The notes under the pieces are model-generated. The model had not been told where the DNA came from, made no database searches, and was given only the letters and a program-made list of their open reading frames with translations. Shown in pieces: positions 1,526 through 46,675 of a stretch of DNA of 47,430 nt (positions are counted from its first letter, which is position 1; each line of letters starts with the position of its first letter). The translations under genes and the position numbers were made by a program. This DNA is from Octopus bimaculoides (lineage: Eukaryota): contig NC_069003.1 in NCBI RefSeq assembly GCF_001194135.2, positions 29,226,647-29,274,076 of the forward strand, read 5' to 3'.

Positions 1526-1796
1526 CATACATAAAGACATACATGCATACACACACAAGTTACCTTAGTGTTAAATATATATATATATATATANNNNNNN
1601 NNNATATTCTTTGTGAAAGACTTACTTTACTACTTCAGAAAAATATATTTATATAAAATATTTTAGTCTGTGTACAGACACGAATACACATCTACATATC
1701 CCGTATATTTATGAAATATCATATATTATCGCTTTCCAGATATGCTTATGTATATATATATATATATATACATATATATACATTTCTATCCCTAAA

Positions 1797-7796: not shown

Positions 7797-9107
7797 NNNN
7801 NNNNNNNNNNNNNNNNNNNNNNNNNNNNNNNNNNNNNNNNNNNNNNNNNNNNNNNNNNNNNNNNNNNNNNNNNNNNNNNNNNNNNNNNNNNNNNNNNNNN
7901 NNNNNNNNNNNNNNNNNNNNNNNNNNNNNNNNNNNNNNNNNNNNNNNNNTATATATACTTATAGGCAAGTTCAAAGTTCTGCGCATTTTGTATCAAATCC
8001 AGAACTTACAAGTCATACTTCTTAACATCATACGCAAATGCCTGCCTTACTTCGCGCACTCATGACTCGCTATTTTCTCGTTCCCTTAACACCCACAAAC
8101 ACCCCAGGAACCGTTACATACATATTATTCTACGTGTAAGTTTTGGTTTTCTAGATTATTTTTTCTCTGTCCCACTTTCTTCGTACGACAGCATGCGCTC
8201 GGCGCATCTGTCAAGCGCATGTAAGTATACCATTCCTTCAAACGAAGCAAATATAAAATATTCTACTTAAATACTCTCTCGAAGTGTTTCAGAAAATAAA
8301 TTTGTCTCGAACATTCAGAGTCAAATACATTAATCTCTGAGATGTTCAGCTAATATTTACTGCCATTTGTTAAAGTATTGTAGCGACAGTTTTATTAGAA
8401 TATGCTTGTAATAGTCTTTGAAGCCGTATTAATTGTACTTATTTTCCAATTAAAATTAAATAGCAGTCATAAAATGTCGATGTCGAAAAGTTTGAATGTT
8501 TTAATAACAATATCAAAGTCTTTGTTCTGACAAAAGTTATTGTTTTTTACCTCATGTTTAAAACGCAATAAACGCACGCTGAGAGCAATTAAAAGATGTG
8601 AAGATGAAAGACCTACAGAGTTTAGCTTTTAGCAGCAGATGAGTATAAATTAATTAATTGTAGGTGGTGGACAATAAAATTAAACAATTATAGCCAATAT
8701 TACAAAACAAGAAACCGGTCATACAAGGTACTCAGGTTAAATCAAATACTATGGTCTCTTAATTAAATTTCAGATTCTGATCTAAAGTGTGACATAAGTG
8801 ATGCACACCATATTATTACAAATATAGACTAGGATATTAAGCATCTAATTAAAGAATATTAGCAACGCAAAGAGCATTTTAATGAGACAAATGAAAAAAC
8901 AGTTTATTAACAAGTTTTCCTTACATAAACATGTCAACAAATGTAGAATGAAGGATAAACTGAATTATTGCGGCACTGTATATATAATGGTCCCCGGAGG
9001 ATGAAATTCAAATTCTTTCTAATTTTTGGCTCCGGACCAGCTATTTTGAGGGGAGGGGAAGCTGATAACTTTCATTTCACTGCTGAACTGGTGGATCAAG
9101 TGATGGA

Positions 9108-15330: not shown

Positions 15331-15566
15331 GGGGGAGAGGGAGAGAGAGAGGGGGAGAGGAAGAGAGAGATAGAGATCTATTTAAAAATATATTATATAC
15401 ATATACATATATGTGTGTGTGTATGTATATATGTGCATAAACGTATNNNNNNNNNNNNNNNNNNNNNNNNNNNNNNNNNNNNNNNNNNNNNNNNNNNNNN
15501 NNNNNNNNNNNNNNNNNNNNNNNNNNNNNNNNNNNNNNNNNNNNNNNNNNNNNNNNNNNNNNNNAT

Positions 15567-15640: not shown

Positions 15641-16456
15641 ATTTATGAATGTGTGACATTGTGCAAATATATAAGAGTGAGTGTGTGTATATGTATATGA
15701 CCATAAATGAAAAATGCATTAAATGCTACCAAAAGTACACGTAGGATAGACGCAACAAATCTATAAAAACTTATACATACATAATATTTGTATTCTCTCG
15801 TGACCATCCAAAGCTCTCATTAGCAATATATCCTGTCTCCAAAGATATCATATAAAAGATACAACACTATATATTGTCCATTGGATATATTCCATAGCAC
15901 ACCCATTTTGTTTGTAAGTCGCGTCGGTGATGTATGTTTAAACTTCTCAGATTAGATATTCCGCAAATATACCAGGTCGTATCAAATGATGGTAGATATA
16001 TTTGTATATGAAGTTGTATTATATCAATGACTATATATACGTCTTCAAAGCATGCAATGGTTTGATGTTTACAAGCCAGAAGAGATATTGTTTTCATATT
16101 GACATATGTCAGTACTGCCATAGTTTGTTTTATTTCTCGCAGAACTGTCATCGAAGATAATAGCAACGTATATGTTTCATGTAGTAACATTAAAACAAAT
16201 CATACTTCGTGTTCACTATTCTCACTCGTCCCTCATTTTCTCTTTCTCTCTTCTCTCCTAATTTTAGCATTTTATATTTGTATATATATACATATATATA
16301 TATATATATANNNNNNNNNNNNNNNNNNNNNNNNNNNNNNNNNNNNNNNNNNNNNNNNNNNNNNNNNNNNNNNNNNNNTGTGTGTGTGTGTGTGTGTGTA
16401 TGAGTATATATATATATACATATTTATATACATAATGTATATGTGTGTGTGTGTGT

Positions 16457-20268: not shown

Positions 20269-20278
20269 NNNNNNNNNN

Positions 20279-25840: not shown

Positions 25841-28211
25841 TATGTATCCATCCTCTCATCCTTATTCTTCTCTATCCACGCCTCATCATATCCTAAAGAA
25901 GGATTATTTCTTTGACTCATAATTAACTCATTTCACGTCTTAGAGTCCCAAGCTAATAATTTTAATTATGAGATAGATCTTCATTTTTTTTTCTCATGTC
26001 AATTTTTTCCTCATATCTGTGACTGGGTGCGCGCACGCGAGTGTGACGGCATGTCTGCGCTTAATTTTCTTATGACAGTTTACGAACATTGATATAAGAT
26101 CATCAAATCATAGACTAGTTTCATAGTTATTCAACGAATTAACTAGTACATGAATTAGTAGGGAAAGTGTCTTGTAATTTGAGCACACAAATATGATCAT
26201 TACTATTATTGGTAATTTATAGCATAATTAAATTTCTAATTAACCCTAACCAGTTAAGCTACATGAACTTGTCTGTGTTTGTACATATTTCATAAATATG
26301 AATACATGCATGTATGTATATACATACACATACGTATGTGTGCTTGTGTGCATATGTGTGTGTAGTCTTAACATTCACACTAGCAATTAACTTGGATCTT
26401 GGATGATGGTTAAAAAATATTAAAAAAATATGTGAGTCTCATACCACCTTTACACTCTGTAGTTACTAAACCTTCTTTGATAAGATAAACGAATTACTGA
26501 AATGCTACATAATATAATACAGCGTAATATGATATGATATAATATAATGATGTAATGTAATATAGTGAAATGAAACATAATAAAATAACATAATATGATT
26601 GCATATGCAGAGATTGATGTGTACTGAATGTTATGCTATGGCAACATATCTTTTATACTTTTATAACATATGCTGATGTTTAGATATAATGAAAGCTAGG
26701 TTCATGCTTGGCTTCGTAAACAACTGTTTACCAGATAAAAAAAAAAATCCTATTTTGTTTATTTCCTTTACGTTGATAATAATCTTGTTATGTTTTATAA
26801 ATCGCTTGCAAAATTATTATGTAATTTAGTTACTACGTCAATACACATCAGAGAACTCAGTTCGCTCTAAGAGTTCTTCTTTAGATGAAACTTAATAGAT
26901 TTTGATAATAATGATTATCGTTTTCTTCTTTCAAAATGTAATATCAATCGATACGACGAAACAAAAATTTATCAATAAAAGATACTTTTTGCTCTAATGG
27001 ACGCATACAGTTGTTTTTGCACTTGTTTATTTAGATATGTCTTTTTTTTTCCTTTAAAAGTTAGTCCCTTTAGCCAAATAAAAGAATTTCTGGAGAAACT
27101 TGTGGATCTGGAATATTAGTATTTATTACAAAGGTTATGAAAGAAATAAAGGAAACTTATTAATTCCAGAAATACATATATTGAGATTTTTAATACCTCG
27201 TTGGTTTACTTAATCTGTGGATTATAAAAAAACTACTATTGTATACATATGCGCATGTATATTGTGTATTTGTTCGTGTGTAACTTGGCAGGCTACATAA
27301 GAAGAGAGAAAATCGATACTACAGTTCTATTAACTAGTGGGAATTGAAAATATTTGAATACTATTTTGTTTTATAGTGAATAGTATTTCTTGTAAAATAT
27401 AGAAACTTGAATTATCAATATAAATAACAAATTTCTGTTTTATATTTTATATGGCAGATTAATTTTCTTGGTACAAATCAAACTTCTTCAGTATAATTCG
27501 TTTTTCAATTTCTTTTAGAATTTTCACTTAAGATATACGTCACTGTATATTTAAAACAAATACATATAAAAATCGTTCCGAATGGCAAAGTTTGAAATTA
27601 TTATCTGCATTAAAAATTCAAGTTTGGTGCTAATATGTAAATATCGGCTAGAAATAGTAAAGGTAAAAATGAAATTATGCTAAACAACATATTATTATTA
27701 TCATAATGTGTGTGAATACGTTTGTCAGTCTGTATACACACATACACACATACATACATATATACATATATTCAAGAAATAAACGTTTTATTCTCCTTGA
27801 GAGGGCTGATCACAAAGGTCGAATTCTAATACATAAATATAAAATTCAGAGGTATATATATATACATNNNNNNNNNNNNNNNNNNNNNNNNNNNNNNNNN
27901 NNNNNNNNNNNNNNNNNNNNNNNNNNNNNNNNNNNNNNNNNNNNNNNNNNNNNNNNNNNNNNNNNNNNNNNNNNNNNNNNNNNNNNNNNNNNNNNNNNNN
28001 NNNNNNNNNNNNNNNNNNNNNNNNNNNNNNNNNNNNNNNNNNNNNNNNNNNNNNAAAATTGCTGACATTCCTTCTATTAATGGCACATAAATATTTGTAA
28101 CAAGACTTTACCGCGGAACCTCGTTCAACACACAATTTAATAAATTAAAAATAGATGTGTAACTGAATCATAGAATACTCGATGCACTTACACACAAGAG
28201 AACCATGAGTA

Positions 28212-33128: not shown

Positions 33129-33967
33129 ACATATATTCTGAAGCACTGCTTTATTGAATAAGTTTGAAGCACATTTTCAAGTGAAGTACTTCACCGGAAT
33201 AAAAAGATTTTCGAAATGGTTATGGAATTACTCAGAACTGAATTTAGCAACATTTTCAAACTTTATTGAAAGATGTTACTAACCTAAGCCATCGCTAGTT
33301 GTATGTTTCTTCTTTATATCTTGTGTTCCCCCAAATCAATCCGTATGGAACACTAACCAGTAACTTTCAGCGAACAGATACAGGGAACGCTAGGGAACAT
33401 TTGTATCTATTTTCATTAGATGCACCAATATTCTTTTGTTGATCGAAGGCGGGAGTGATTACGTATTCTTCCTCTTCACGAAAGATCACACGCTATTGGG
33501 AATGACGTTAATTATTGGGAGAATGTTTGTGCTTATGTGCATGTTGTGTGTAGTTTGGGGATATTAAAGGCCTTACTTTCCAGCTACAGTCATTCCATAG
33601 TTGTGGGGAAATCTACAATATAGTTTGTCTCAATACATTATTTAATACAGTAGAGTTCGAGTCGACGGAGATTTAGCTGTACTAGAATTAGCATTTGGAT
33701 CTACTAGAATTAACATCTATTGGGACTCTTTATGTTAAGTATATAGTTAGAGATATTTTTGTTTAACTCGACAAGTTACTTTGATTCTCATGATGATATT
33801 TCTTAAATTTCTTCTTAGCTACGCATTGCAGACCGCGACATAAAAGCTTGTTTGTTACTTGAGCTTCATGTATAGCACATCTCTGAATTTCATACACAAT
33901 AAGATTTCAAATTTAGAAATAATACATTTCTAAATCTCTCAGAGAGATTTATGCAGTAGTGATACGA

Positions 33968-34165
33968 TGAAGTAGTTGTATGCTGTCAACTTAATGTGAA
34001 AGTTCCCTGAAGGGTATAATACTACTGTTGGTTAGAGCTAGGAAGCTGCACGGCTTCCTGTCGGCCTTGACACATTTCCTGTGTCCTTATGTTTACAATG
34101 AGTAAACATATTATTATTCCCTTCAGGGGACTGTCACATTAAGTTGACAGCATACAACTACTTCA
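33968..34165. mobile_element. 198-bp fold-back / MITE-like element with 54-bp inverted arms
   Basis: 33968-34021 is the reverse complement of 34112-34165 at 51/54 positions; the outer 32 bp are perfect (TGAAGTAGTTGTATGCTGTCAACTTAATGTGA). CGA flanks both ends (33965-33967, 34166-34168), a possible 3-bp TSD. Confidence 0.8.
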
Positions 34166-34910
34166 CGATAAGATTTGTTTAACATCTTGATACCTTATAT
34201 TTCTTAATAAATTATGCATTACGAAGTGAATTTTCTTTTTCATCTTCATAAAAATGGTACCGAATTCACATTTGCAGCGTTTTCATTTCCATTTTATGAA
34301 TGTGTAGTCCTTCAAATGTTCTTTTACTCACTTCTTTATGTAATATTTCAGTAAATTTTTGTATGTTTTCCATAATTCATTGCTGTAATTCAAATATTGA
34401 GCACAAGCCATTACAGAACTGAGATAGAATTTTTTTTTTTTTAATTTGCTATGTTCCGGTATGCGATAGAATTTTGTTGTGATATTTGAGAATGTGGATG
34501 TTACTATATGTGAGGTTTGAAGATATATCTGTTTTATTTGCAAATAACTGCTAGTTCTGTATAATTATTTCTAAGTTGTCCTATGATGTTTTTGCTGCTA
34601 TCTTATTTCCAAATTATCCATAATAGCTCAATTATCGTTTGAAGAACATAGTTATTTTTAGCTGTATGTTTAGCAACTTTTTCATCGTTCCATAATTATA
34701 TTTTCTATTATTTTTCATTTGATTACTTTTTTCTTTCGAGTAACAGTGGATTGCTTGAATCCGTAGGATGTTGGACAACGCTGCTATAGAATTTCCCATA
34801 AAATTGATAAAAGAAAAAGACCAAGAGCAACAACAAAGCACTGAATCTAGTTAAGGTACAGAGTAAAAATGGCTTGAACAGTGTAAGCAGGCAATATATT
34901 TAAGAGTACT

Positions 34911-35148: not shown

Positions 35149-35366
35149 ATCGTTTCAAATTTTGGCACAAGGCCTGAATATGTTTTGTGGTGGGTGTAGG
35201 AGTAGCAGGTTGTTAGGCAATGACGTCAACCCCAAATCTTAACTGATACTTAGCGAACCAGGAACAGGAAAGCCAACACCGACCTCGAAAGTATCTGAAC
35301 TTAAAACATAGAGACAGACGATATGCTGGTAAACATTTTGTCCGATGTACTAACGATTCTACCAAC
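35149..35366 (-). mobile_element. SINE family A, full length, tail-to-tail with the previous copy
   Basis: GTTTCAAATTTTGGCACAAGGCC tail and TACTAACGATTCTACCA head, both as reverse complement. Confidence 0.8.
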
Positions 35367-36415
35367 AAACAGTGACTATCAAGGCTTCAACTCGTAACTG
35401 ATTTGATGTGTTATCACGTACAAATTTTGTCTTGGTGTAAAAAAGATGGGCTACAACAAATTTTCTGCTTAATACCACAGATTTGCATGTCAGTTGTTTG
35501 ATCTTAATCAGGGGAGCATGTCCTTCAGTGGCTGACAATATGTGCATCTCTGATCACGAGCAGAAGTAGTTGGGGGAGCATCATGCACATGTGTTGAGAG
35601 GATTTCTTTGGGGTTTGAATAATTCAACATCCTTAAACCAGGTTATAAAGTTTTAAAAAATCAGTTCAGAATATCTGTTCAATTTATAGAGTTAGCAACA
35701 GACTAATTTTTACGGACAACCGACGAGACAACAACAACAGCAATAATTATTATTATATTAATGGCTTCAAAGTTTAGCAACCTCAGGGACACACGCCATC
35801 TGGGTGCAACAGTAATATCCACTTCGTATATTATAGACTGGAAATTGTAACTTGAAGGAGAAACTTGGTTAGAATTTCTAGGAGGTCGATCGACAGCATA
35901 CAGCTCCACCCTGGTCATAGATAAGTATTCTATATGGTTAATATAAATGGGTTAAAGGATTAAGAATAGCTGTATTTAAACAAAAGTGCTAAGGAAAGAA
36001 TGTCATATTAGAAGAATGACAGAATATTGAAGAGACAGAGTTAGAGATGAAATAAAATTCAGTTATGGAATTATCAACATGAATGGAAAAAGAATAAATA
36101 GGAAATTGGGGGAATTTGGTAGAATCTAATAATCAGACTGCAAAAGAGCTAAGAGCAAATCTTGTGTAGTGTAAAAATATAACTTCATAGTGCAAAATCT
36201 GTAAGAGATTAGATAAAAATTATTAATCCATGAAATAATAAGCTTAATGTTAAATTCCATGGAATCTAGCATTGCATGCAAATGTTTCCAGGGAAATCGT
36301 AGCATGTAATCACGAGAAAAACAATTGGTGCAGAAAAAATTTCAAATGGAAGAAGGCGACAAGGAACTTGTGCTGACTTTGCCGTGTTCCCAATAACGAT
36401 TTATTAGATAAAGTT

Positions 36416-37612: not shown

Positions 37613-38337
37613 AGGCACAGACGGGGTTGCGTGATAGGAAGTTTGATTCCCAACCACTTGGGTCCGGGTTCAGTTCTACTGCGTAGCACCTTGGGCAAGT
37701 GATTTCTACAATAGCCTCGGGCCGACCAAAACCTTGTGAGTCGATTTAGTAGACGGAAACTGAAAGAAGCCCGTCGTATATANNNNNNNNNNNNNNNNNN
37801 NNNNNNNNNNNNNNNNNNNNNNNNNNNNNNNNNNNNNNNNNNNNNNNNNNNNNNNNNNNNNNNNNNNNNNNNNNNNNNNNNNNNNNNNNNNNNNNNNNNN
37901 NNNNNNNNNNNNNNNNNNNNNNNNNNNNNNNNNNNNNNNNNNNNNNNNNNNNNNNNNNNNNNNNNNNNNNNNNNNNNNNNNNNNNNNNNNNNNNNNNNNN
38001 NNNNNNNNNNNNNNNNNNNNNNNNNNNNNNNNNNNNNNNNNNNNNNNNNNNNNNNNNNNNNNNNNNNNNNNNNNNNNNNNNNNNNNNNNNNNNNNNNNNN
38101 NNNNNNNNNNNNNNNNNNNNNNNNNNNNNNNNNNNNNTGTGTGTGTGTCTGTGTGTGTGTGTGTGTGTGTGTGTCTTTGTGTCTGTGTTTGTCGCTCACC
38201 TATGCTTGGCAACCGGCCGTAAGTTAGCGGTTCGGCAAAAGAGTTCGATAGAATAAGTATCAGGCTTGAAATAAAGAAAAACTAAAGGCTGTACCTCAGC
38301 ATGGTCGCAGTCAAATGACGGAAACAAGAAGATAAAA
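37613..38337 (+). mobile_element. SINE family B, full length; central microsatellite is an assembly gap
   Basis: Head 37613-37782 with B-box-like GGGTTCAGTTC, gap 37783-38137, tail to 38337. Confidence 0.9.
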
Positions 38338-40369: not shown

Positions 40370-41602
40370 ATGGAATCGTTATTCAATGAGACTGTTCACG
40401 TCACGGAACAAAGCTTGTTCAGTGAGAATTTCAACGACACATATCCTGACATGGACAATTCTTTTTCAAACGGCACGGAACACAGTATTAGAAGAGTATT
40501 CATGGAAATTGTTAATATAACTGTAATGATCAGTAACTCTCTGATCTGCATCACAGGACTGTTTGGCAATTGTTTGGTAATATATGTTGTAACGATGTTC
40601 TCGAAAATGAAAACTGTCACCAATACCTATATCTTGAATCTTGCAATTGCTGACGTCCTCTTCTTAGTTAGTATTCCTTTACTTATTGTTACAATTAAGA
40701 ATGGATTTTGGATGTTTGGATTCTTTATGTGTAAATTCTATTATCTTTTAGTATCCATAAATTCTTTTACTGGGGTCTTTACGTTGACAGTTATGAGTGC
40801 TGATAGATACCTCGCTGTTTGTCATCCAATAAAATCCATGTCACTCAGAACACCAAAGGTAGCATTTATTATAACCGTATGTATATGGTTAATATCTATC
40901 CTGATAATGTTGCCTGCCCTAATGTATTCTACAACAGTACGTAATGCAAAAAACAGAGACAGCTGTACGATGGTGATGCCAGATCACTTGGGAATCTCGC
41001 CAGATAAAATATTCATTTGGTACAACTTCATATTTTCCTATGCTATTCCTGTACCACTTATATCTGTATTTTACATCTCAGTTGTCCATAAACTACGTAC
41101 TACAGGCCCAGTTAAAAAGTCTTCTGAGAAAAAAAAGTCACAGAAACGTGTCACCCGAATGGTGCTGACTGTTATTGGGGTGTACATTATTTGCTGGTTA
41201 CCCTATTGGGCTTTTCAGCTTGATATAGTAGTTTTTACACCACCAGTTACTGAAGGACGTATTTTAATGTTCCAAACGTTTAACATCCTTACATACGCTA
41301 ATAGTATGTTAAATCCCTTACTCTATAACTTCCTCAGTGATAATTTCCGTAAAAGTTTCACAAAAGCATTTAAATGTACTTCTCGTTTCGAGGTCAACCG
41401 TTCCCTCCGAGCAGAAAACAGTATTTATCCAAAAGGACGTGAAGCATACTCACAAACAACAGTTATCGAAAAACAAGAATTACAAACTATAAACCATTGC
41501 GCTACCGAAAACAAAGTCCAGGAAGATTTTGCCAATGGAGAAACCCAGACAGAGGACATTGACGTCGACGAACCAGAAGTAGTTGTTACGGAGTTGGAAT
41601 GA
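40370..41602 (+). CDS. AstC-R: Allatostatin-C receptor-like (somatostatin/opioid-related) class A GPCR, 410 aa, intronless CDS
   Basis: Seven hydrophobic segments with GN (N67), KMKTVTNTYILNLAIAD (D95), C121/C199 disulfide pair, MSADRYLAVCHP, W173, P227, CWLPYW, NSMLNPLLY and helix 8 FLSDNFRKSF plus C336. N-glycosylation sequons at N6, N22, N34, N49. ICL3 KLRTTGPVKKSSEKKKSQKRVTRMVLTVI resembles protostome AstC receptors. Start context CAACATGG has A at -3 and G at +4. Orthology is from motif recognition, not a tree. Confidence 0.93.
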   Translation: MESLFNETVHVTEQSLFSENFNDTYPDMDNSFSNGTEHSIRRVFMEIVNITVMISNSLICITGLFGNCLVIYVVTMFSKMKTVTNTYILNLAIADVLFLVSIPLLIVTIKNGFWMFGFFMCKFYYLLVSINSFTGVFTLTVMSADRYLAVCHPIKSMSLRTPKVAFIITVCIWLISILIMLPALMYSTTVRNAKNRDSCTMVMPDHLGISPDKIFIWYNFIFSYAIPVPLISVFYISVVHKLRTTGPVKKSSEKKKSQKRVTRMVLTVIGVYIICWLPYWAFQLDIVVFTPPVTEGRILMFQTFNILTYANSMLNPLLYNFLSDNFRKSFTKAFKCTSRFEVNRSLRAENSIYPKGREAYSQTTVIEKQELQTINHCATENKVQEDFANGETQTEDIDVDEPEVVVTELE

Positions 41603-41708: not shown

Positions 41709-44171
41709 TGCGTTTTCTCCAAGAATTAATAGTATATCAGTAAGGGATGTAAAGGAACCCATATTATATCCTATATATATTGTATTATTTAAGCGATGAA
41801 TAATAACTTCAAACATGAAGAGTACAGTCCTAACTTATTAAATAATACAGAAGCAGCGAAATGGACACGCATATTGAATATTGCATATATTCTACAAATA
41901 CTAATACACACAGACACACACATATACACGCATACGTACAAACATACATACGTAGAACGATGAATATCCAACTAGATATGTGAATATATTATATATGCGT
42001 GTATACTTATATTTATATATGTATCAGTGTATTAAGTATATTTGCATATTTCTGTATATTAATAATTATTATTAGATAATTATAATAAACTATATGTACG
42101 AAGATTGCTGTCTATTTTATTACAATTACTTCAATATATGAATATTTCCGTGATATATGTATTCAATAAATGCGAGATCACACACATGCACATACGTACA
42201 CACACAAACTTCCACAGATATACATATCAAAGAAGATATATGTGCATATGCAGACACATAAACACACAAACGATTGATATATGAGTACGTACCTGTGTGT
42301 TGTGCGTGTGTATGTTGTGTGCATGCATGCATGTATGAGTGCATGAACATGTGCTTGCGTACAGGATTTTACAAGACAATAGATTATGGCAATCGCCCCT
42401 ATATTGTGATGGCATCACTTTGATATACATATAGACTCATTTGAACATTATACATCTCTGTCTATACGTCATCCAATGTTGTGAAATTGTAATATATTTT
42501 TGTCATTTATTTCTGTCCATATATCCCTAACCCGTTTCTTTCTTTCTCATATAAATAAGTATATATGTATATATGTAAGCATGGATGTATGTATATATAT
42601 NNNNNNNNNNNNNNNNNNNNNNNNNNNNNNNNNNNNNNNNNNNNNNNNNNNNNNNNNNNNNNNNNNNNNNNNNNNNNNNNNNNNNNNNNNNNNNNNNNNN
42701 NNNNNNNNNNNNNNNNNNNNNNNNNNNNNNNNNNNNNNNNNNNNNNNNNNNNNNNNNNNNNNNNNNNNNNNNNNNNNNNNNNNNNNNNNNNNNNNNNNNN
42801 NNNNNNNNNNNNNNNNNNNNNNNNNNNNNNNNNNNNNNNNNNNNNNNNNNNNNNNNNNNNNNNNNNNNNNNNNNNNNNNNNNNNNNNNNNNNNNNNNNNN
42901 NNNNNNNNNNNNNNNNNNNNNNNNNNNNNNNNNNNNNNNNNNNNNNNNNNNNNNNNNNNNNNNNNNNNNNNNNNNNNNNNNNNNNNNNNNNNNNNNNNNN
43001 NNNNNNNNNNNNNNNNNNNNNNNNNNNNNNNNNNNNNNNNNNNNNNNNNNNNNNNNNNNNNNNNNNNNNNNNNNNNNNNNNNNNNNNNNNNNNNNNNNNN
43101 NNNNNNNNNNNATATATATATATATATATATATATACATTTATATATATATTGATATATTTATATTATGTATATACATACTCACACACACATATAGATAT
43201 ATATAAATCAATATATATAAATGCATATATATGCATATATGTACATATATATGTGTATATATATAACTTCATATACACATGGATATGCATATATATGTAT
43301 ATATATATGCACACGACATTTTACCAGACTTCATGTTAATCATATTTGAATGTTACTTTTTATTTGTAAGAGTAATGAAGATGTAAGTTAAAATTTTAGA
43401 ACTATTAATTAATTGATCAGTTTTCAAGTTTAAATGTGATTTCTTTTCTTTTTAAACATCAGTGTTGTTCCAAATACATTCTCGCATTATAGAAAACCTT
43501 TTTATTATTTATCTTCGTGATATATGTCAATGATAAATATTTTGAATATAGTGTAATGGTAGTATCCCTTATTTCTCAAAACTTGCTATATATCTCTAGC
43601 AACAACATAGACTGTGTGGAAATGTATAAAACGAGATTCTAACTCCTCTCATTTTAACCTCTCAATGAAGAGCAATCTTCTTTAGCACCGCAAACAAACC
43701 AACTTCAAACTGCAGGTTTAAATGTTATATTTTTATTAATAACTTCAAACTCTATTACCTCTCATTTAAGACCCGACCAAATACCACTTACTTTTTAAGC
43801 CACCCATAAAATTCATCTAACTACCAATAAATCTGTTATGAACACTATTTAACGCAATCCGCAAAGCCCAAAGACATTGCACATATTCACTAATTACAAT
43901 ACCCATGTAATAACCCGACAAAACATCAGCCAAATTTAATCCCATATATATTCATTTGTAAGTCTGTGCACTTCTCCATACCTACAAATCACTTCCTCTA
44001 CAGCCTCCATTGTCCGTACCAGTTGAACGAGTCTGTGTACCCGGCGTATGCGCTAATACATCTGTCAGCGTCTTTGTTGGTTTGTCCATACACGTGTACC
44101 CGTGTATCTTTGTCTTTATGTCCATGTTTTTACTTACCTCTGACCCTGTGTCCATGTATGTAGATACATAA

Positions 44172-44202
<31 letters not shown>

Positions 44203-44777
44203 CATACATTCATACATACATCTATATATGTATAAAATACATAAATTACAGAGAAATAGTTTTATGTAACTATCATTAAATTCTAAAATCAGGACAAATT
44301 GTCTCGTAACTTAAAAACGTAAGCAATTTATATTATATTCAAAATAAAATAAATTACGAACATGTCTGCATGAAGATCGTTTTCCATTTTATCAAACTAT
44401 ATAATCTTTATGTTTGGTAGAGCATTTTACGAGTACTACCGTATTCCTTGAATCCATATATTGTATCTTACACATATATATGTGTGTTTAGTTTATTGTT
44501 CTCTGATGGTAAGATCAGTAAACGAAGACATAAATTTTATTTAATAAACTCAATGTTTTCATGTGCTATGTTTAGTTTCATGTGTTGAAAAACGGCCAAA
44601 GATTATTTTATAACACGTATGGGGTCCTAGCACAATCGTCGAACACTACCCACATGGCATAACGAACAACAAATAGGACAAGAGTAAATGCCAGAAAAGG
44701 CGAGAAGGAAATATATATAACAAGTGCAAGGGTGAAAAACAAGAAAATGAGAAAGATTTAGAGTTTTCCCGTCAGAC

Positions 44778-45982: not shown

Positions 45983-46675
45983 CCTTATAATTTACGTTCT
46001 AAGGATAATAGCTCTTAATCTAATTTCCTCTGTTGTCTCTTTCTCATATGATTTTCGTTGTTCCACCTTTTATATATTTATATATATATATATATATATA
46101 CATACTTCTCGCTTTTTCTCTCGTTCCGTTTTTGTGTTCGTTATGCCATGTGGGCAATGTCCGATGATTGTGTTAAGACCCCCAGACGTGTTATAACACA
46201 CTATTCATAAATAAATACACATATGTGTGTTAGAGTCTGTGAATATGTTTGTAAATGTCTCTGTATGCGTTTCTCTATGTACCGCCCTGTCATTCTTGTT
46301 TTCTCATTGCAATTAACCAGACCTATCTTCTAAATCGAACACCATTGTATTTCAAATATTCAGTACCAAACAGCCCATTCTACTTTCCTCAACTTATTTT
46401 CATTAAAAAAAGACTATCAAATGTGTAGTGTTGGAAACAAAACAATTTTCCCAATATAAGCCACAGTTATTAACATCCCACAAACGAATTATCTAAGTAT
46501 TTCTGAATTTATTTTCTCATCCTTCCTTATTACTAATCTCGAAGCACATTTACTCTTCCAACCCATCAACGTGCATCTACATACAACCACATGAAGACAA
46601 ACCACATGAGTTATTACAGCACATACAGATAGCATACACAATTTCTTATAAGTAACACACCCATTTGTTAAATTT

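What the first reader, a model, noticed from the sequence alone, without database searches (positions are those of the whole stretch)
33968..34165. Near-perfect fold-back element: 54-bp stem capped by three small hairpins, inside the putative receptor intron
Seen: arms 33968-34021 and 34112-34165 pair at 51/54 positions (A.G at 34000, T.G wobble at 34004, T.T at 34015). The 90-nt spacer holds three consecutive perfect hairpins: AGGAAGC/GCTTCCT (34040-34059, 7 bp), GACACA/TGTGTC (34069-34085, 6 bp) and TATGTTTAC/GTAAACATA (34088-34110, 9 bp). The right arm can alternatively fold on itself (CTGTCA/TGACAG, 34131-34150), so two competing folds exist. CGA flanks both ends. Established: MITEs are TIR-bounded and can give rise to hairpin RNAs, and long intronic dsRNA is an ADAR substrate, with coleoids having very high A-to-I editing. 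Inference: either a young MITE of a superfamily I cannot place (TGAAG ends with a 3-bp non-TWA TSD fit none well) or a selected structured RNA; the ordered spacer is more than a MITE needs.
Basis: partly seen in the sequence, partly recalled or inferred. Interest (0 to 1): 0.7.

Follow-up and report, generated by a model that had tools for sequence, protein, structure and literature searches.

The report
Young octopus-specific fold-back DNA insertion
The near-perfect hairpin is real, but it is most of a roughly 256-bp piece of DNA inserted only in the Octopus bimaculoides lineage, most likely a by-product of mobile-element insertion rather than a conserved functional RNA.

Summary
Arms 33968-34021 and 34112-34165 pair at 51/54 positions, the three inner hairpins are perfect, and the fold is far beyond chance (MFE -114 kcal/mol, z = -16.5).

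The window is Octopus bimaculoides chromosome CM046623.1, 6.2 kb upstream of a single-exon somatostatin-receptor-like GPCR.

The key result is that the orthologous site in O. sinensis and O. vulgaris is empty. O. bimaculoides carries a 256-258-bp insert (33908-34165) flanked by an 11-13-bp target duplication, CAC[A/G]ATAAGATTT. The insert is larger than the hairpin: 57-60 nt lie between the left duplication and the left arm. The hairpin is therefore not a TIR-bounded MITE with a 3-bp duplication.

The best single-event model is reverse transcription primed from both nicked target strands. This is LINE-1 'twin priming', and it is also the usual Penelope-like-element layout of an inverted 5'-truncated copy plus a one-sided tail. 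On this model two head-to-head copies of one hairpin-rich source of about 200 nt were joined, and the long stem is an accident of insertion.

Rfam, tRNA, hammerhead, viral and protein searches found nothing. Copy number could not be tested, because no tool here searches octopus genomes by DNA. Conservation as a selected RNA is refuted within the genus. Interest is low.

The parts
33895..33907 (.). Left copy of the target-site duplication, CACAATAAGATTT. It has one CpG-to-CpA difference from the right copy and from the empty site.
   Evidence: O. sinensis and O. vulgaris have a single CACGATAAGATTT. The background rate for a non-simple 12/13 repeat at 150-400 bp spacing in this window is 2.4e-5 per pair.
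33908..33967 (-). One-sided 57-60-nt 'leader' or tail. It is part of the insert but lies outside the inverted repeat, and holds two small palindromes (ATTTAGAAAT/ATTTCTAAAT and TAAATCTCTC/GAGAGATTTA). In the model it is the extra 3' end of the minus-strand copy.
   Evidence: Absent from the O. sinensis and O. vulgaris site. The palindromes are shown. It is not significantly templated from the local flanks.
33968..34024 (-). Left arm of the inverted repeat. In the model it is one of the two copies of the same source segment.
   Evidence: 51/54 (or 53/57) complementary to the right arm.
34025..34108 (.). Spacer with three perfect local hairpins (34040-34059, 34069-34085, 34088-34110). In the model it is the unique part of the longer of the two 5'-truncated copies.
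   Evidence: z = -3.5. No match in Rfam, ARAGORN or the viral scans.
34109..34165 (+). Right arm of the inverted repeat, with an internal CTGTCA/TGACAG hairpin at 34131-34150. Its last two bases (CA) overlap the right target duplication.
34164..34176 (.). Right copy of the target-site duplication, CACGATAAGATTT, identical to the empty site.

Best explanation
SHOWN. The hairpin is the larger part of a 256-258-bp block (33908-34165). O. bimaculoides has this block, and the orthologous sites of O. sinensis and O. vulgaris lack it. The block is flanked by an 11-13-bp duplication of the target, and its inverted repeat does not bound it.

INFERRED. The block was made in one event by target-primed reverse transcription from both nicked strands of the target. 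Two 5'-truncated cDNA copies of one hairpin-rich RNA 3' region of about 200 nt were laid down head-to-head, with 5' ends inward and 3' ends outward.

- One copy supplies arm + spacer (141 nt) and the other supplies the second arm (57 nt).
- The copy on the minus strand started 57-60 nt further 3' on the template. This leaves a one-sided 'tail', the leader at 33908-33967.
- The reconstructed source reads + strand 34025-34165 followed by the reverse complement of 33908-33967.

This is the topology of LINE-1 'twin priming' 5' inversions with overlapping cDNAs. It is also the routine architecture of Penelope-like elements: an inverted 5'-truncated copy, an optional one-sided tail, and a short target duplication.

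On this reading the 54-57-bp stem is an accident of insertion. The small hairpins belong to the source sequence, and the element has no demonstrated function. If the region is transcribed, for example in a 5'-UTR intron of the receptor, the RNA would form a 54-bp duplex that ADAR could edit. That is a possibility, not a finding.
For: 1. Empty site. O. sinensis and O. vulgaris read ...TTTCGTACACGATAAGATTTGTTTAAT.... O. bimaculoides reads CACAATAAGATTT[256 bp]CACGATAAGATTT. Such a 12/13 repeat is about 2e-5 per pair by chance.

2. The left arm is 57-60 nt from the left duplication, so the inverted repeat does not bound the insert.

3. Only the minus-sense orientation gives a self-consistent two-copy layout. 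In that orientation the duplication starts A-rich (C|AAATCTTATCGTG) in AT-rich DNA.

4. Duplication length. In human L1 insertions target duplications have a median of 13 bp, 18-22% of insertions carry 5' inversions, and the two cDNAs can share sequence (PMC12016303).

5. Penelope-like elements. Their insertions are strongly 5'-truncated and often carry an adjacent inverted 5'-truncated copy plus a 30-40-bp tail at one end only (PMC8557442). Inverted pLTRs with 8-10-bp duplications and a 31-bp tail are documented (PMC3846280). A purified Penelope-like-element protein cleaves and extends both strands and starts reverse transcription at two internal sites, and the interval between them is the tail (PMC11167929).

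6. The reconstructed 201-nt source is itself hairpin-rich (z = -3.9 and -4.2 on the two strands). The inner hairpins therefore need no special explanation.

7. Age. Arm divergence is JC 0.058-0.074. Flank divergence between the species is JC 0.089. With 0.0036 substitutions per site per My, the rate quoted in PMC13282606, this gives 8-10 My for the arms against about 12 My for the split, consistent with an insertion after the split.
Against: - No poly(A) or recognisable retroelement 3' tail.
- No sequence similarity to any retroelement in the roughly 110 kb of octopus DNA in hand.
- No protein match to any frame of the insert.
- No hammerhead ribozyme: Rfam at E<=10 and no CUGANGA core.
- The 54-57-bp shared segment is longer than typical L1 cDNA overlaps (median 12 bp).
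- The 57-60-nt tail is longer than the 30-40 bp reported for Penelope-like elements.
- The CGA direct repeat touching both hairpin ends is left as a 1-in-64 coincidence.
- The source family was never observed, because no tool here searches octopus genomes by DNA.
- The direction of change rests on the duplication and on arm age, not on an outgroup. Argonauta aligns only in the CDS. Three mismatches cannot statistically exclude an insertion before the split (P about 0.29).
Confidence: 0.45

Rival explanations
1. A genuine MITE (198 bp, TGAAG...CTTCA ends, 3-bp CGA duplication) inserted at ACA|CGA|TAAG. A second event at the left junction, for example break repair at the palindrome with template switching, then added about 68 bp that begins with a copy of the right-hand flank (CAATAAGATTT).
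For: Long near-identical terminal inverted repeats and a small non-coding size. CGA directly abuts both arms. The right junction is exactly what a CGA-duplicating insertion into the empty site predicts. Recently active MITEs and several TIR superfamilies are reported in O. vulgaris (PMC13282606).
Against: It needs two independent events at the same nucleotide. The left junction does not match the empty site. The filler is not detectably templated from local sequence. TGAAG ends with a non-TWA 3-bp duplication fit no known superfamily. No second copy exists in 47 kb of O. bimaculoides plus 63 kb of other octopod loci.
Confidence: 0.2
2. A fragment of DNA or cDNA from another locus that already contained the palindrome was captured at a staggered double-strand break. 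No transposition machinery specific to the element was involved.
For: The insert is not bounded by its own repeats, has no poly(A), and matches nothing else available.
Against: The right end of the captured fragment would have to coincide with the end of the palindrome to within 2 nt. An 11-13-bp duplication is not typical of simple end-joining capture.
Confidence: 0.12
3. The insert predates the O. bimaculoides / O. vulgaris split and was lost from the O. vulgaris-sinensis lineage. The loss was a precise deletion between its two target duplications, stimulated by the palindrome. This rival concerns timing only and is compatible with any insertion mechanism.
For: There is no outgroup for the site. 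Three arm mismatches do not statistically exclude the older age.
Against: It requires exact restoration of the empty site. The point estimate of arm age is younger than flank divergence. One copy of the duplication still equals the empty site exactly.
Confidence: 0.1
4. A selected structured RNA: a hairpin-RNA or microRNA-like precursor, or a dedicated ADAR substrate that regulates the neighbouring receptor.
For: A very stable fold with an ordered spacer, on the same strand as a neural-type GPCR 6.2 kb downstream.
Against: It is absent from O. sinensis and O. vulgaris. Both strands fold equally well. There is no Rfam family. A mollusc small-RNA survey that included O. bimaculoides found no siRNA-type Dicer and little sign of long-dsRNA processing (PMC12479628). 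The perfect small stems are expected at this age without selection.
Confidence: 0.03
5. An assembly artefact of the short-read, scaffolded assembly.
For: The window has 8 N-runs. Complex inverted insertions are known to trouble short-read assemblies (PMC8557442).
Against: The hairpin lies in a gap-free stretch between N-runs at 28054 and 37783. The palindrome is imperfect, with 3 mismatches. It sits between a diverged target duplication at a site that aligns cleanly to two other genomes. Assembly errors are not expected to produce these features.
Confidence: 0.04

Closest known systems
Penelope-like element insertions (inverted 5'-truncated copy or pLTR plus a one-sided tail)
   Same: Head-to-head inverted copies with 3' ends outward. 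An extra segment at the outer end of only one copy. A short target duplication around the whole unit. No poly(A), an AT-rich target and a palindrome-rich terminal region.
   Different: No sequence or protein homology to any Penelope-like element was found, and no hammerhead motif. The tail is 57-60 nt rather than 30-40, and the duplication is 11-13 bp rather than the 8-10 reported. Only about 200 nt of the presumed element is present.
LINE-1 twin-priming 5' inversions
   Same: One insertion made of an inverted and a direct cDNA of the same template, flanked by a duplication of about 13 bp. The two cDNAs can share sequence. There is 2 nt of microhomology at the junction.
   Different: No poly(A). 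The shared segment is 54-57 bp against a median of 12 bp. The octopus LINE families reported as active (RTE, Dong-R4) are not L1, and the template is unknown.
MITEs / fold-back elements
   Same: Small, non-coding, with long near-identical inverted arms. Predicted to give hairpin RNA if transcribed.
   Different: The target duplication does not abut the left arm. The ends and the 3-bp repeat fit no superfamily. No second copy was seen.
Inverted-repeat dsRNA substrates of ADAR (for example inverted Alu pairs) and Drosophila hpRNA loci
   Same: A long, nearly perfect intramolecular duplex, possibly within a transcribed non-coding region.
   Different: No evidence of transcription, editing or small RNAs. 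The element is lineage-specific and young. Molluscs appear to lack an siRNA-type Dicer pathway (PMC12479628).
Parvovirus-type terminal hairpins (T/Y-shaped ITR)
   Same: A long stem capped by small hairpins.
   Different: Three caps rather than two. No viral genes adjoin it. It sits between a target duplication in host DNA. There are no exact 20-23-mer matches in IMG/VR.

Membership tests
MITE (non-autonomous TIR DNA transposon) | Terminal inverted repeats at the very ends of the inserted unit | tested here: not met
   The empty-site comparison shows that the inserted unit starts at 33908, which is 57-60 nt before the left arm. Only the right arm ends at the insert boundary.
MITE (non-autonomous TIR DNA transposon) | Target-site duplication of superfamily-specific length directly abutting both TIRs | tested here: not met
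   The duplicated target is 11-13 bp (33895-33907 / 34164-34176) and does not abut the left arm. The CGA triplet abuts both arms, but it is not what was duplicated from the empty site.
MITE (non-autonomous TIR DNA transposon) | Multi-copy family with conserved ends | not testable with these tools
   There is no DNA search of octopus genomes. It is single-copy in the 47-kb window and absent from 63 kb of O. sinensis, O. vulgaris and Argonauta loci.
TPRT insertion with 5' inversion (twin priming) | Variable-length (about 7-20 bp) target duplication flanking the whole insert | tested here: met
   An 11-13-bp duplication flanks the whole insert, and the site is empty in two congeners. Chance rate is 2.4e-5 per pair.
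TPRT insertion with 5' inversion (twin priming) | Inverted and direct segments map to one template with 3' ends outward | tested here: inconclusive
   The layout is self-consistent in one orientation only, but the template itself was not found.
TPRT insertion with 5' inversion (twin priming) | Poly(A) or a family-specific 3' tail at the 3' junction | tested here: not met
   The minus-sense 3' end reads ...TTTCTAAATTTG directly before the duplication. There is no A-run or simple repeat.
Penelope-like element | Inverted 5'-truncated copy plus a tail at one end only | tested here: met
   Arms of 57 nt with an 84-nt unique part, and a 57-60-nt one-sided extension. The architecture is as described in PMC8557442 and PMC3846280.
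Penelope-like element | Homology to PLE RT / GIY-YIG or pLTR, or a hammerhead ribozyme in the pLTR | tested here: not met
   No protein hit for any frame. No Rfam hammerhead at E<=10. No CUGANGA core in the reconstructed source. Some PLE clades do lack hammerheads.
Conserved structured RNA / microRNA or hpRNA precursor | Presence and structure conserved in related species, or an Rfam family match | tested here: not met
   Absent in O. sinensis and O. vulgaris. The best Rfam hit is MIR1435 at 18 bits against a gathering score of 94, E = 6.3.
Conserved structured RNA / microRNA or hpRNA precursor | Transcription, small RNAs or A-to-I editing at the locus | not testable with these tools
   No read data are accessible. 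An exact-sequence search of the literature found nothing.
tRNA-derived SINE / tRNA-like cloverleaf | Detectable tRNA-related region | tested here: not met
   ARAGORN found nothing in standard and mitochondrial modes. Only spurious calls appeared at very relaxed settings.

The most novel reading that the evidence does not exclude
The hairpin is a copy of an undescribed fold-back mobile-element family of the O. bimaculoides lineage. Its long stem capped by three hairpins is part of its mobility or is processed as RNA. As a transcribed 54-bp duplex upstream of, or within the 5'-UTR intron of, a somatostatin-receptor-like gene, it serves as a lineage-specific ADAR or dsRNA regulatory module.
Probability: 0.05. 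Interest if true: 0.6.

Novelty: new member of a known kind. Interest (0 to 1): 0.2.

Why it matters
It matters little for function. The element is a young, species-lineage-specific insertion with no sign of selection.

It is useful as a cautionary example. A structure that looks like a MITE or a designed RNA can arise when a retroelement inserts from both strands, and one empty-site comparison is enough to show that the apparent 3-bp duplication is misleading.

If genome-wide searches confirm a Penelope-like or LINE source, such mini head-to-head inserts would be a ready supply of long dsRNA-forming sequences in cephalopod introns. That is relevant to the origin of ADAR substrates in coleoids.

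Tried and rejected
- Rfam, whole window at gathering scores and the local region at E<=10: nothing meaningful.
- tRNA and mitochondrial tRNA scans: none.
- Hammerhead core motif: none.
- Six-frame peptides of the insert against 5.8 billion proteins, hoping for spurious ORFs on other copies: no hit at E<=10.
- Exact 20-23-mers in IMG/VR: none.
- Exact 20-mer in JGI metagenomes: one contig sharing only 22 nt, which is a chance match.
- Exact-sequence search of 8 million papers: none.
- Test of whether the 60-nt leader was templated from the flanks or from the hairpin: not significant (best p about 0.02-0.09, AT-rich motifs only).
- Outgroup polarity with Argonauta hians: only the CDS aligns.
- Logan contigs of a third Octopus species: genomic, 2 kb or less, and they do not reach the site.
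- Look-ups of two neighbouring spurious ORFs, to fish read-assembled contigs that span the site: not on record.
- The supplement of the O. vulgaris repeat-annotation paper holds no consensus library.
- Sampling octopus loci through multi-copy transposon proteins to estimate copy number was considered and not run. At most a few hundred kb could be sampled, too little to be informative for the cost.
- Parvovirus-ITR-like and tRNA-cloverleaf readings were rejected for lack of any supporting match.

Full report
**Identity of the window.** The 410-aa ORF at 40370-41602 (+) is a rhodopsin-family GPCR (7tm_1, E = 5e-62). The exact protein is encoded on Octopus bimaculoides chromosome CM046623.1 of GCA_001194135.2. 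Its closest relatives are named 'somatostatin receptor type 2-like' in O. sinensis, O. vulgaris and Argonauta hians. The window is 33% G+C with eight N-runs, as expected for a short-read scaffolded assembly. The CDS is one exon. The hairpin lies 6.2 kb upstream of the ATG on the same strand, so it is in a 5'-UTR intron or in intergenic DNA. I could not decide which. Three O. sinensis transcript variants with the same protein make a 5'-UTR intron plausible.

- The arms pair at 51/54, with mismatches at exactly the positions stated, and extend to 57 nt at 93%.
- The three spacer hairpins, the alternative CTGTCA/TGACAG fold and the flanking CGA are all there.
- The MFE is -114.2 kcal/mol with z = -16.5 on the + strand and -107.8 kcal/mol with z = -15.4 on the - strand. 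This is a DNA-level inverted repeat without a strand-specific signature.
- The spacer alone is more structured than shuffles (z = -3.5, 0 of 200). The 60 nt to the left of the hairpin are not (z = -1.5).
- Apart from microsatellites, N-run artefacts and old inverted SINE pairs, it is the only such fold-back in the window. It has no second copy there.

**The empty site is the key result.** I fetched 10 kb on either side of the orthologous receptor gene from O. sinensis (L002), O. vulgaris (L003) and Argonauta hians (L004). The octopus loci are collinear with the window at 86-93% identity. At the hairpin, both congeners read ...TGAATTTCGTACACGATAAGATTTGTTTAAT.... O. bimaculoides reads ...TGAATTTCATACACAATAAGATTT[256 bp]CACGATAAGATTTGTTTAAC.... 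Three things follow.
- The hairpin is absent from the other two species.
- The extra DNA runs from 33908 to 34163-34165 and includes 57-60 nt to the left of the hairpin.
- It is flanked by an 11-13-bp direct repeat of the target (33895-33907 / 34164-34176), which differs at one CpG.

Non-simple 12/13 repeats at 150-400 bp spacing occur at 2.4e-5 per pair in this window, so this is a real target-site duplication. Argonauta aligns only in the CDS, so there is no outgroup. Polarity rests on the duplication and on age.

**Age.** Flank divergence between O. bimaculoides and O. sinensis or O. vulgaris is JC 0.089 over about 980 bp. Arm-to-arm divergence is JC 0.058 (3/54) to 0.074 (4/57). The rate used is 0.0036 substitutions per site per My, as quoted in PMC13282606.
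- The rate gives about 12 My for the split, against a published range of 13.3-33.5 My.
- It gives 8-10 My for the arms, if they were identical at birth. This fits an insertion in the O. bimaculoides lineage after the split.
- Three mismatches cannot formally exclude an older insertion (P about 0.29).
- At this age only about 1.3 substitutions are expected in the 44 paired bases of the inner hairpins. Their perfection therefore says nothing about selection.

**What it is not.**
- Rfam has no family at gathering scores. The best local hits are noise: MIR1435 at 18 bits against 94, and snoR127.
- There is no tRNA or mitochondrial tRNA and no hammerhead core.
- No protein in 5.8 billion matches any reading frame.
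- No exact 20-23-mer occurs in IMG/VR. One 22-nt match in a metagenome contig is chance. No paper prints the sequence.
- The leader is not detectably copied from the flanks or from the hairpin.

**Mechanism.** A MITE with TGAAG...CTTCA ends and a CGA duplication predicts that the empty site plus 198 + 3 bp gives the filled site. It does not. The left junction carries an additional 68 bp that begins with a second copy of the sequence lying to the right of the hairpin. Rescuing the MITE reading needs a second, complex event at the same nucleotide.

A single event explains everything if the insert is two head-to-head 5'-truncated copies of one template with their 3' ends outward.
- One copy is 141 nt (arm + spacer).
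- The other is 57 nt (arm) and continues outward for a further 57-60 nt (the leader).
- This layout is self-consistent only when the leader is read on the minus strand. The duplication then reads AAATCTTATCGTG preceded by C, an A-rich start in AT-rich DNA.

This is the topology of L1 twin priming. There, 18-22% of insertions carry 5' inversions, the two cDNAs can overlap, and duplications have a median of 13 bp (PMC12016303).

It matches Penelope-like elements even more closely.
- Their insertions are highly 5'-truncated and often have an adjacent inverted 5'-truncated copy.
- They carry a 30-40-bp tail at one end only (PMC8557442).
- Inverted pLTRs with 8-10-bp duplications and a 31-bp tail are documented (PMC3846280).
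- A purified Penelope-like-element protein cleaves and extends both strands. It starts reverse transcription at two internal sites in a stem-loop, and the interval between those sites is the tail (PMC11167929).

The reconstructed 201-nt source is itself a chain of about six local hairpins (z = -3.9 and -4.2). The ordered spacer is therefore inherited from the template and needs no function of its own.

**Weak points of the model.**
- There is no poly(A) or known tail.
- There is no homology to any retroelement in the sequence available, and no hammerhead.
- The overlap and the tail are longer than the published typical values.
- The CGA repeat is left as a 1-in-64 coincidence.
- Above all, the template family was not observed, because none of the tools searches octopus genomes by DNA.

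I put this model at 0.45, MITE plus a second event at 0.20, and capture of a foreign fragment at a break at 0.12. Ancient insertion with precise loss in the O. vulgaris lineage, which is a timing variant, is at 0.10. Assembly artefact is at 0.04 and a selected RNA at 0.03.

**Function.** Nothing indicates one. A mollusc small-RNA survey that included O. bimaculoides found no siRNA-type Dicer and little evidence of long-dsRNA processing. It suggested editing as a way to melt dsRNA (PMC12479628). If the site is transcribed, the 54-bp duplex would be a plausible ADAR substrate. That remains untested.

**Verdict.** The structure is real and striking, but it is ordinary in kind: a young, lineage-specific, mobile-element-derived insertion whose long stem is most likely a by-product of how it was inserted. 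The MITE reading with a 3-bp duplication and the selected-RNA alternative are not supported. Interest is 0.2.

Noticed in passing
window 40370-41602 (+): An intact single-exon 410-aa rhodopsin-family GPCR, named 'somatostatin receptor type 2-like' in O. sinensis and O. vulgaris (same 90% cluster) and 85% identical to the Argonauta hians orthologue. It is the only clear gene in the window.
   Followed up: partly
window ~35154-35166; L002 2046-2415; L003 1790-2158: O. sinensis and O. vulgaris carry an insertion of about 370 bp that O. bimaculoides lacks, flanked by a 9-10-bp TTCAAATTT-type direct repeat. It is another lineage-specific insertion 1 kb from the hairpin.
   Followed up: partly
L003 2619-4988 / L002 2880-5272 versus window 35628-35827: O. 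vulgaris and O. sinensis have a block of about 2.4 kb with LINE-like ORF remnants (...RLYLPRKE...). O. bimaculoides has about 200 bp of unrelated sequence there. The junctions are complex and were not resolved.
   Followed up: partly
window 44621-44678 and 46125-46182: A 58-nt, 83% inverted repeat with arms 1.45 kb apart, in a region shared with O. sinensis and O. vulgaris. It may be an old TIR element or two inverted SINE copies.
   Followed up: no
window 1594-1603, 7797-7949, 15447-15564, 16311-16378, 20269-20278, 27868-28054, 37783-38137, 42601-43111: Eight N-runs, mostly next to (TA)n or (CA)n tracts. These are short-read assembly gaps, and they create spurious 'inverted repeats' in repeat scans.
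   Followed up: yes
L006-L009 (Logan SRR11869384, SRR11869385, SRR11869390, SRR11869391): Genomic contigs of 2 kb or less from a third Octopus species, carrying the same receptor at about 89-92% nucleotide identity to the window. They are too short to reach the hairpin site.
   Followed up: partly
L004 3691-4767 (+), Argonauta hians: A 359-codon stop-free stretch with a LINE-type '...RLYMKRKDGGRGL...' motif about 5 kb upstream of the Argonauta receptor gene. It is probably a retrotransposon ORF remnant.
   Followed up: no
window 33902-33907, 33932-33937 (reverse complement), 33946-33951, 34171-34176: The hexamer AGATTT that ends the target duplication recurs once in each orientation inside the 60-nt leader. 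This could be chance in AT-rich DNA, or a trace of target-like sequence in the tail.
   Followed up: no
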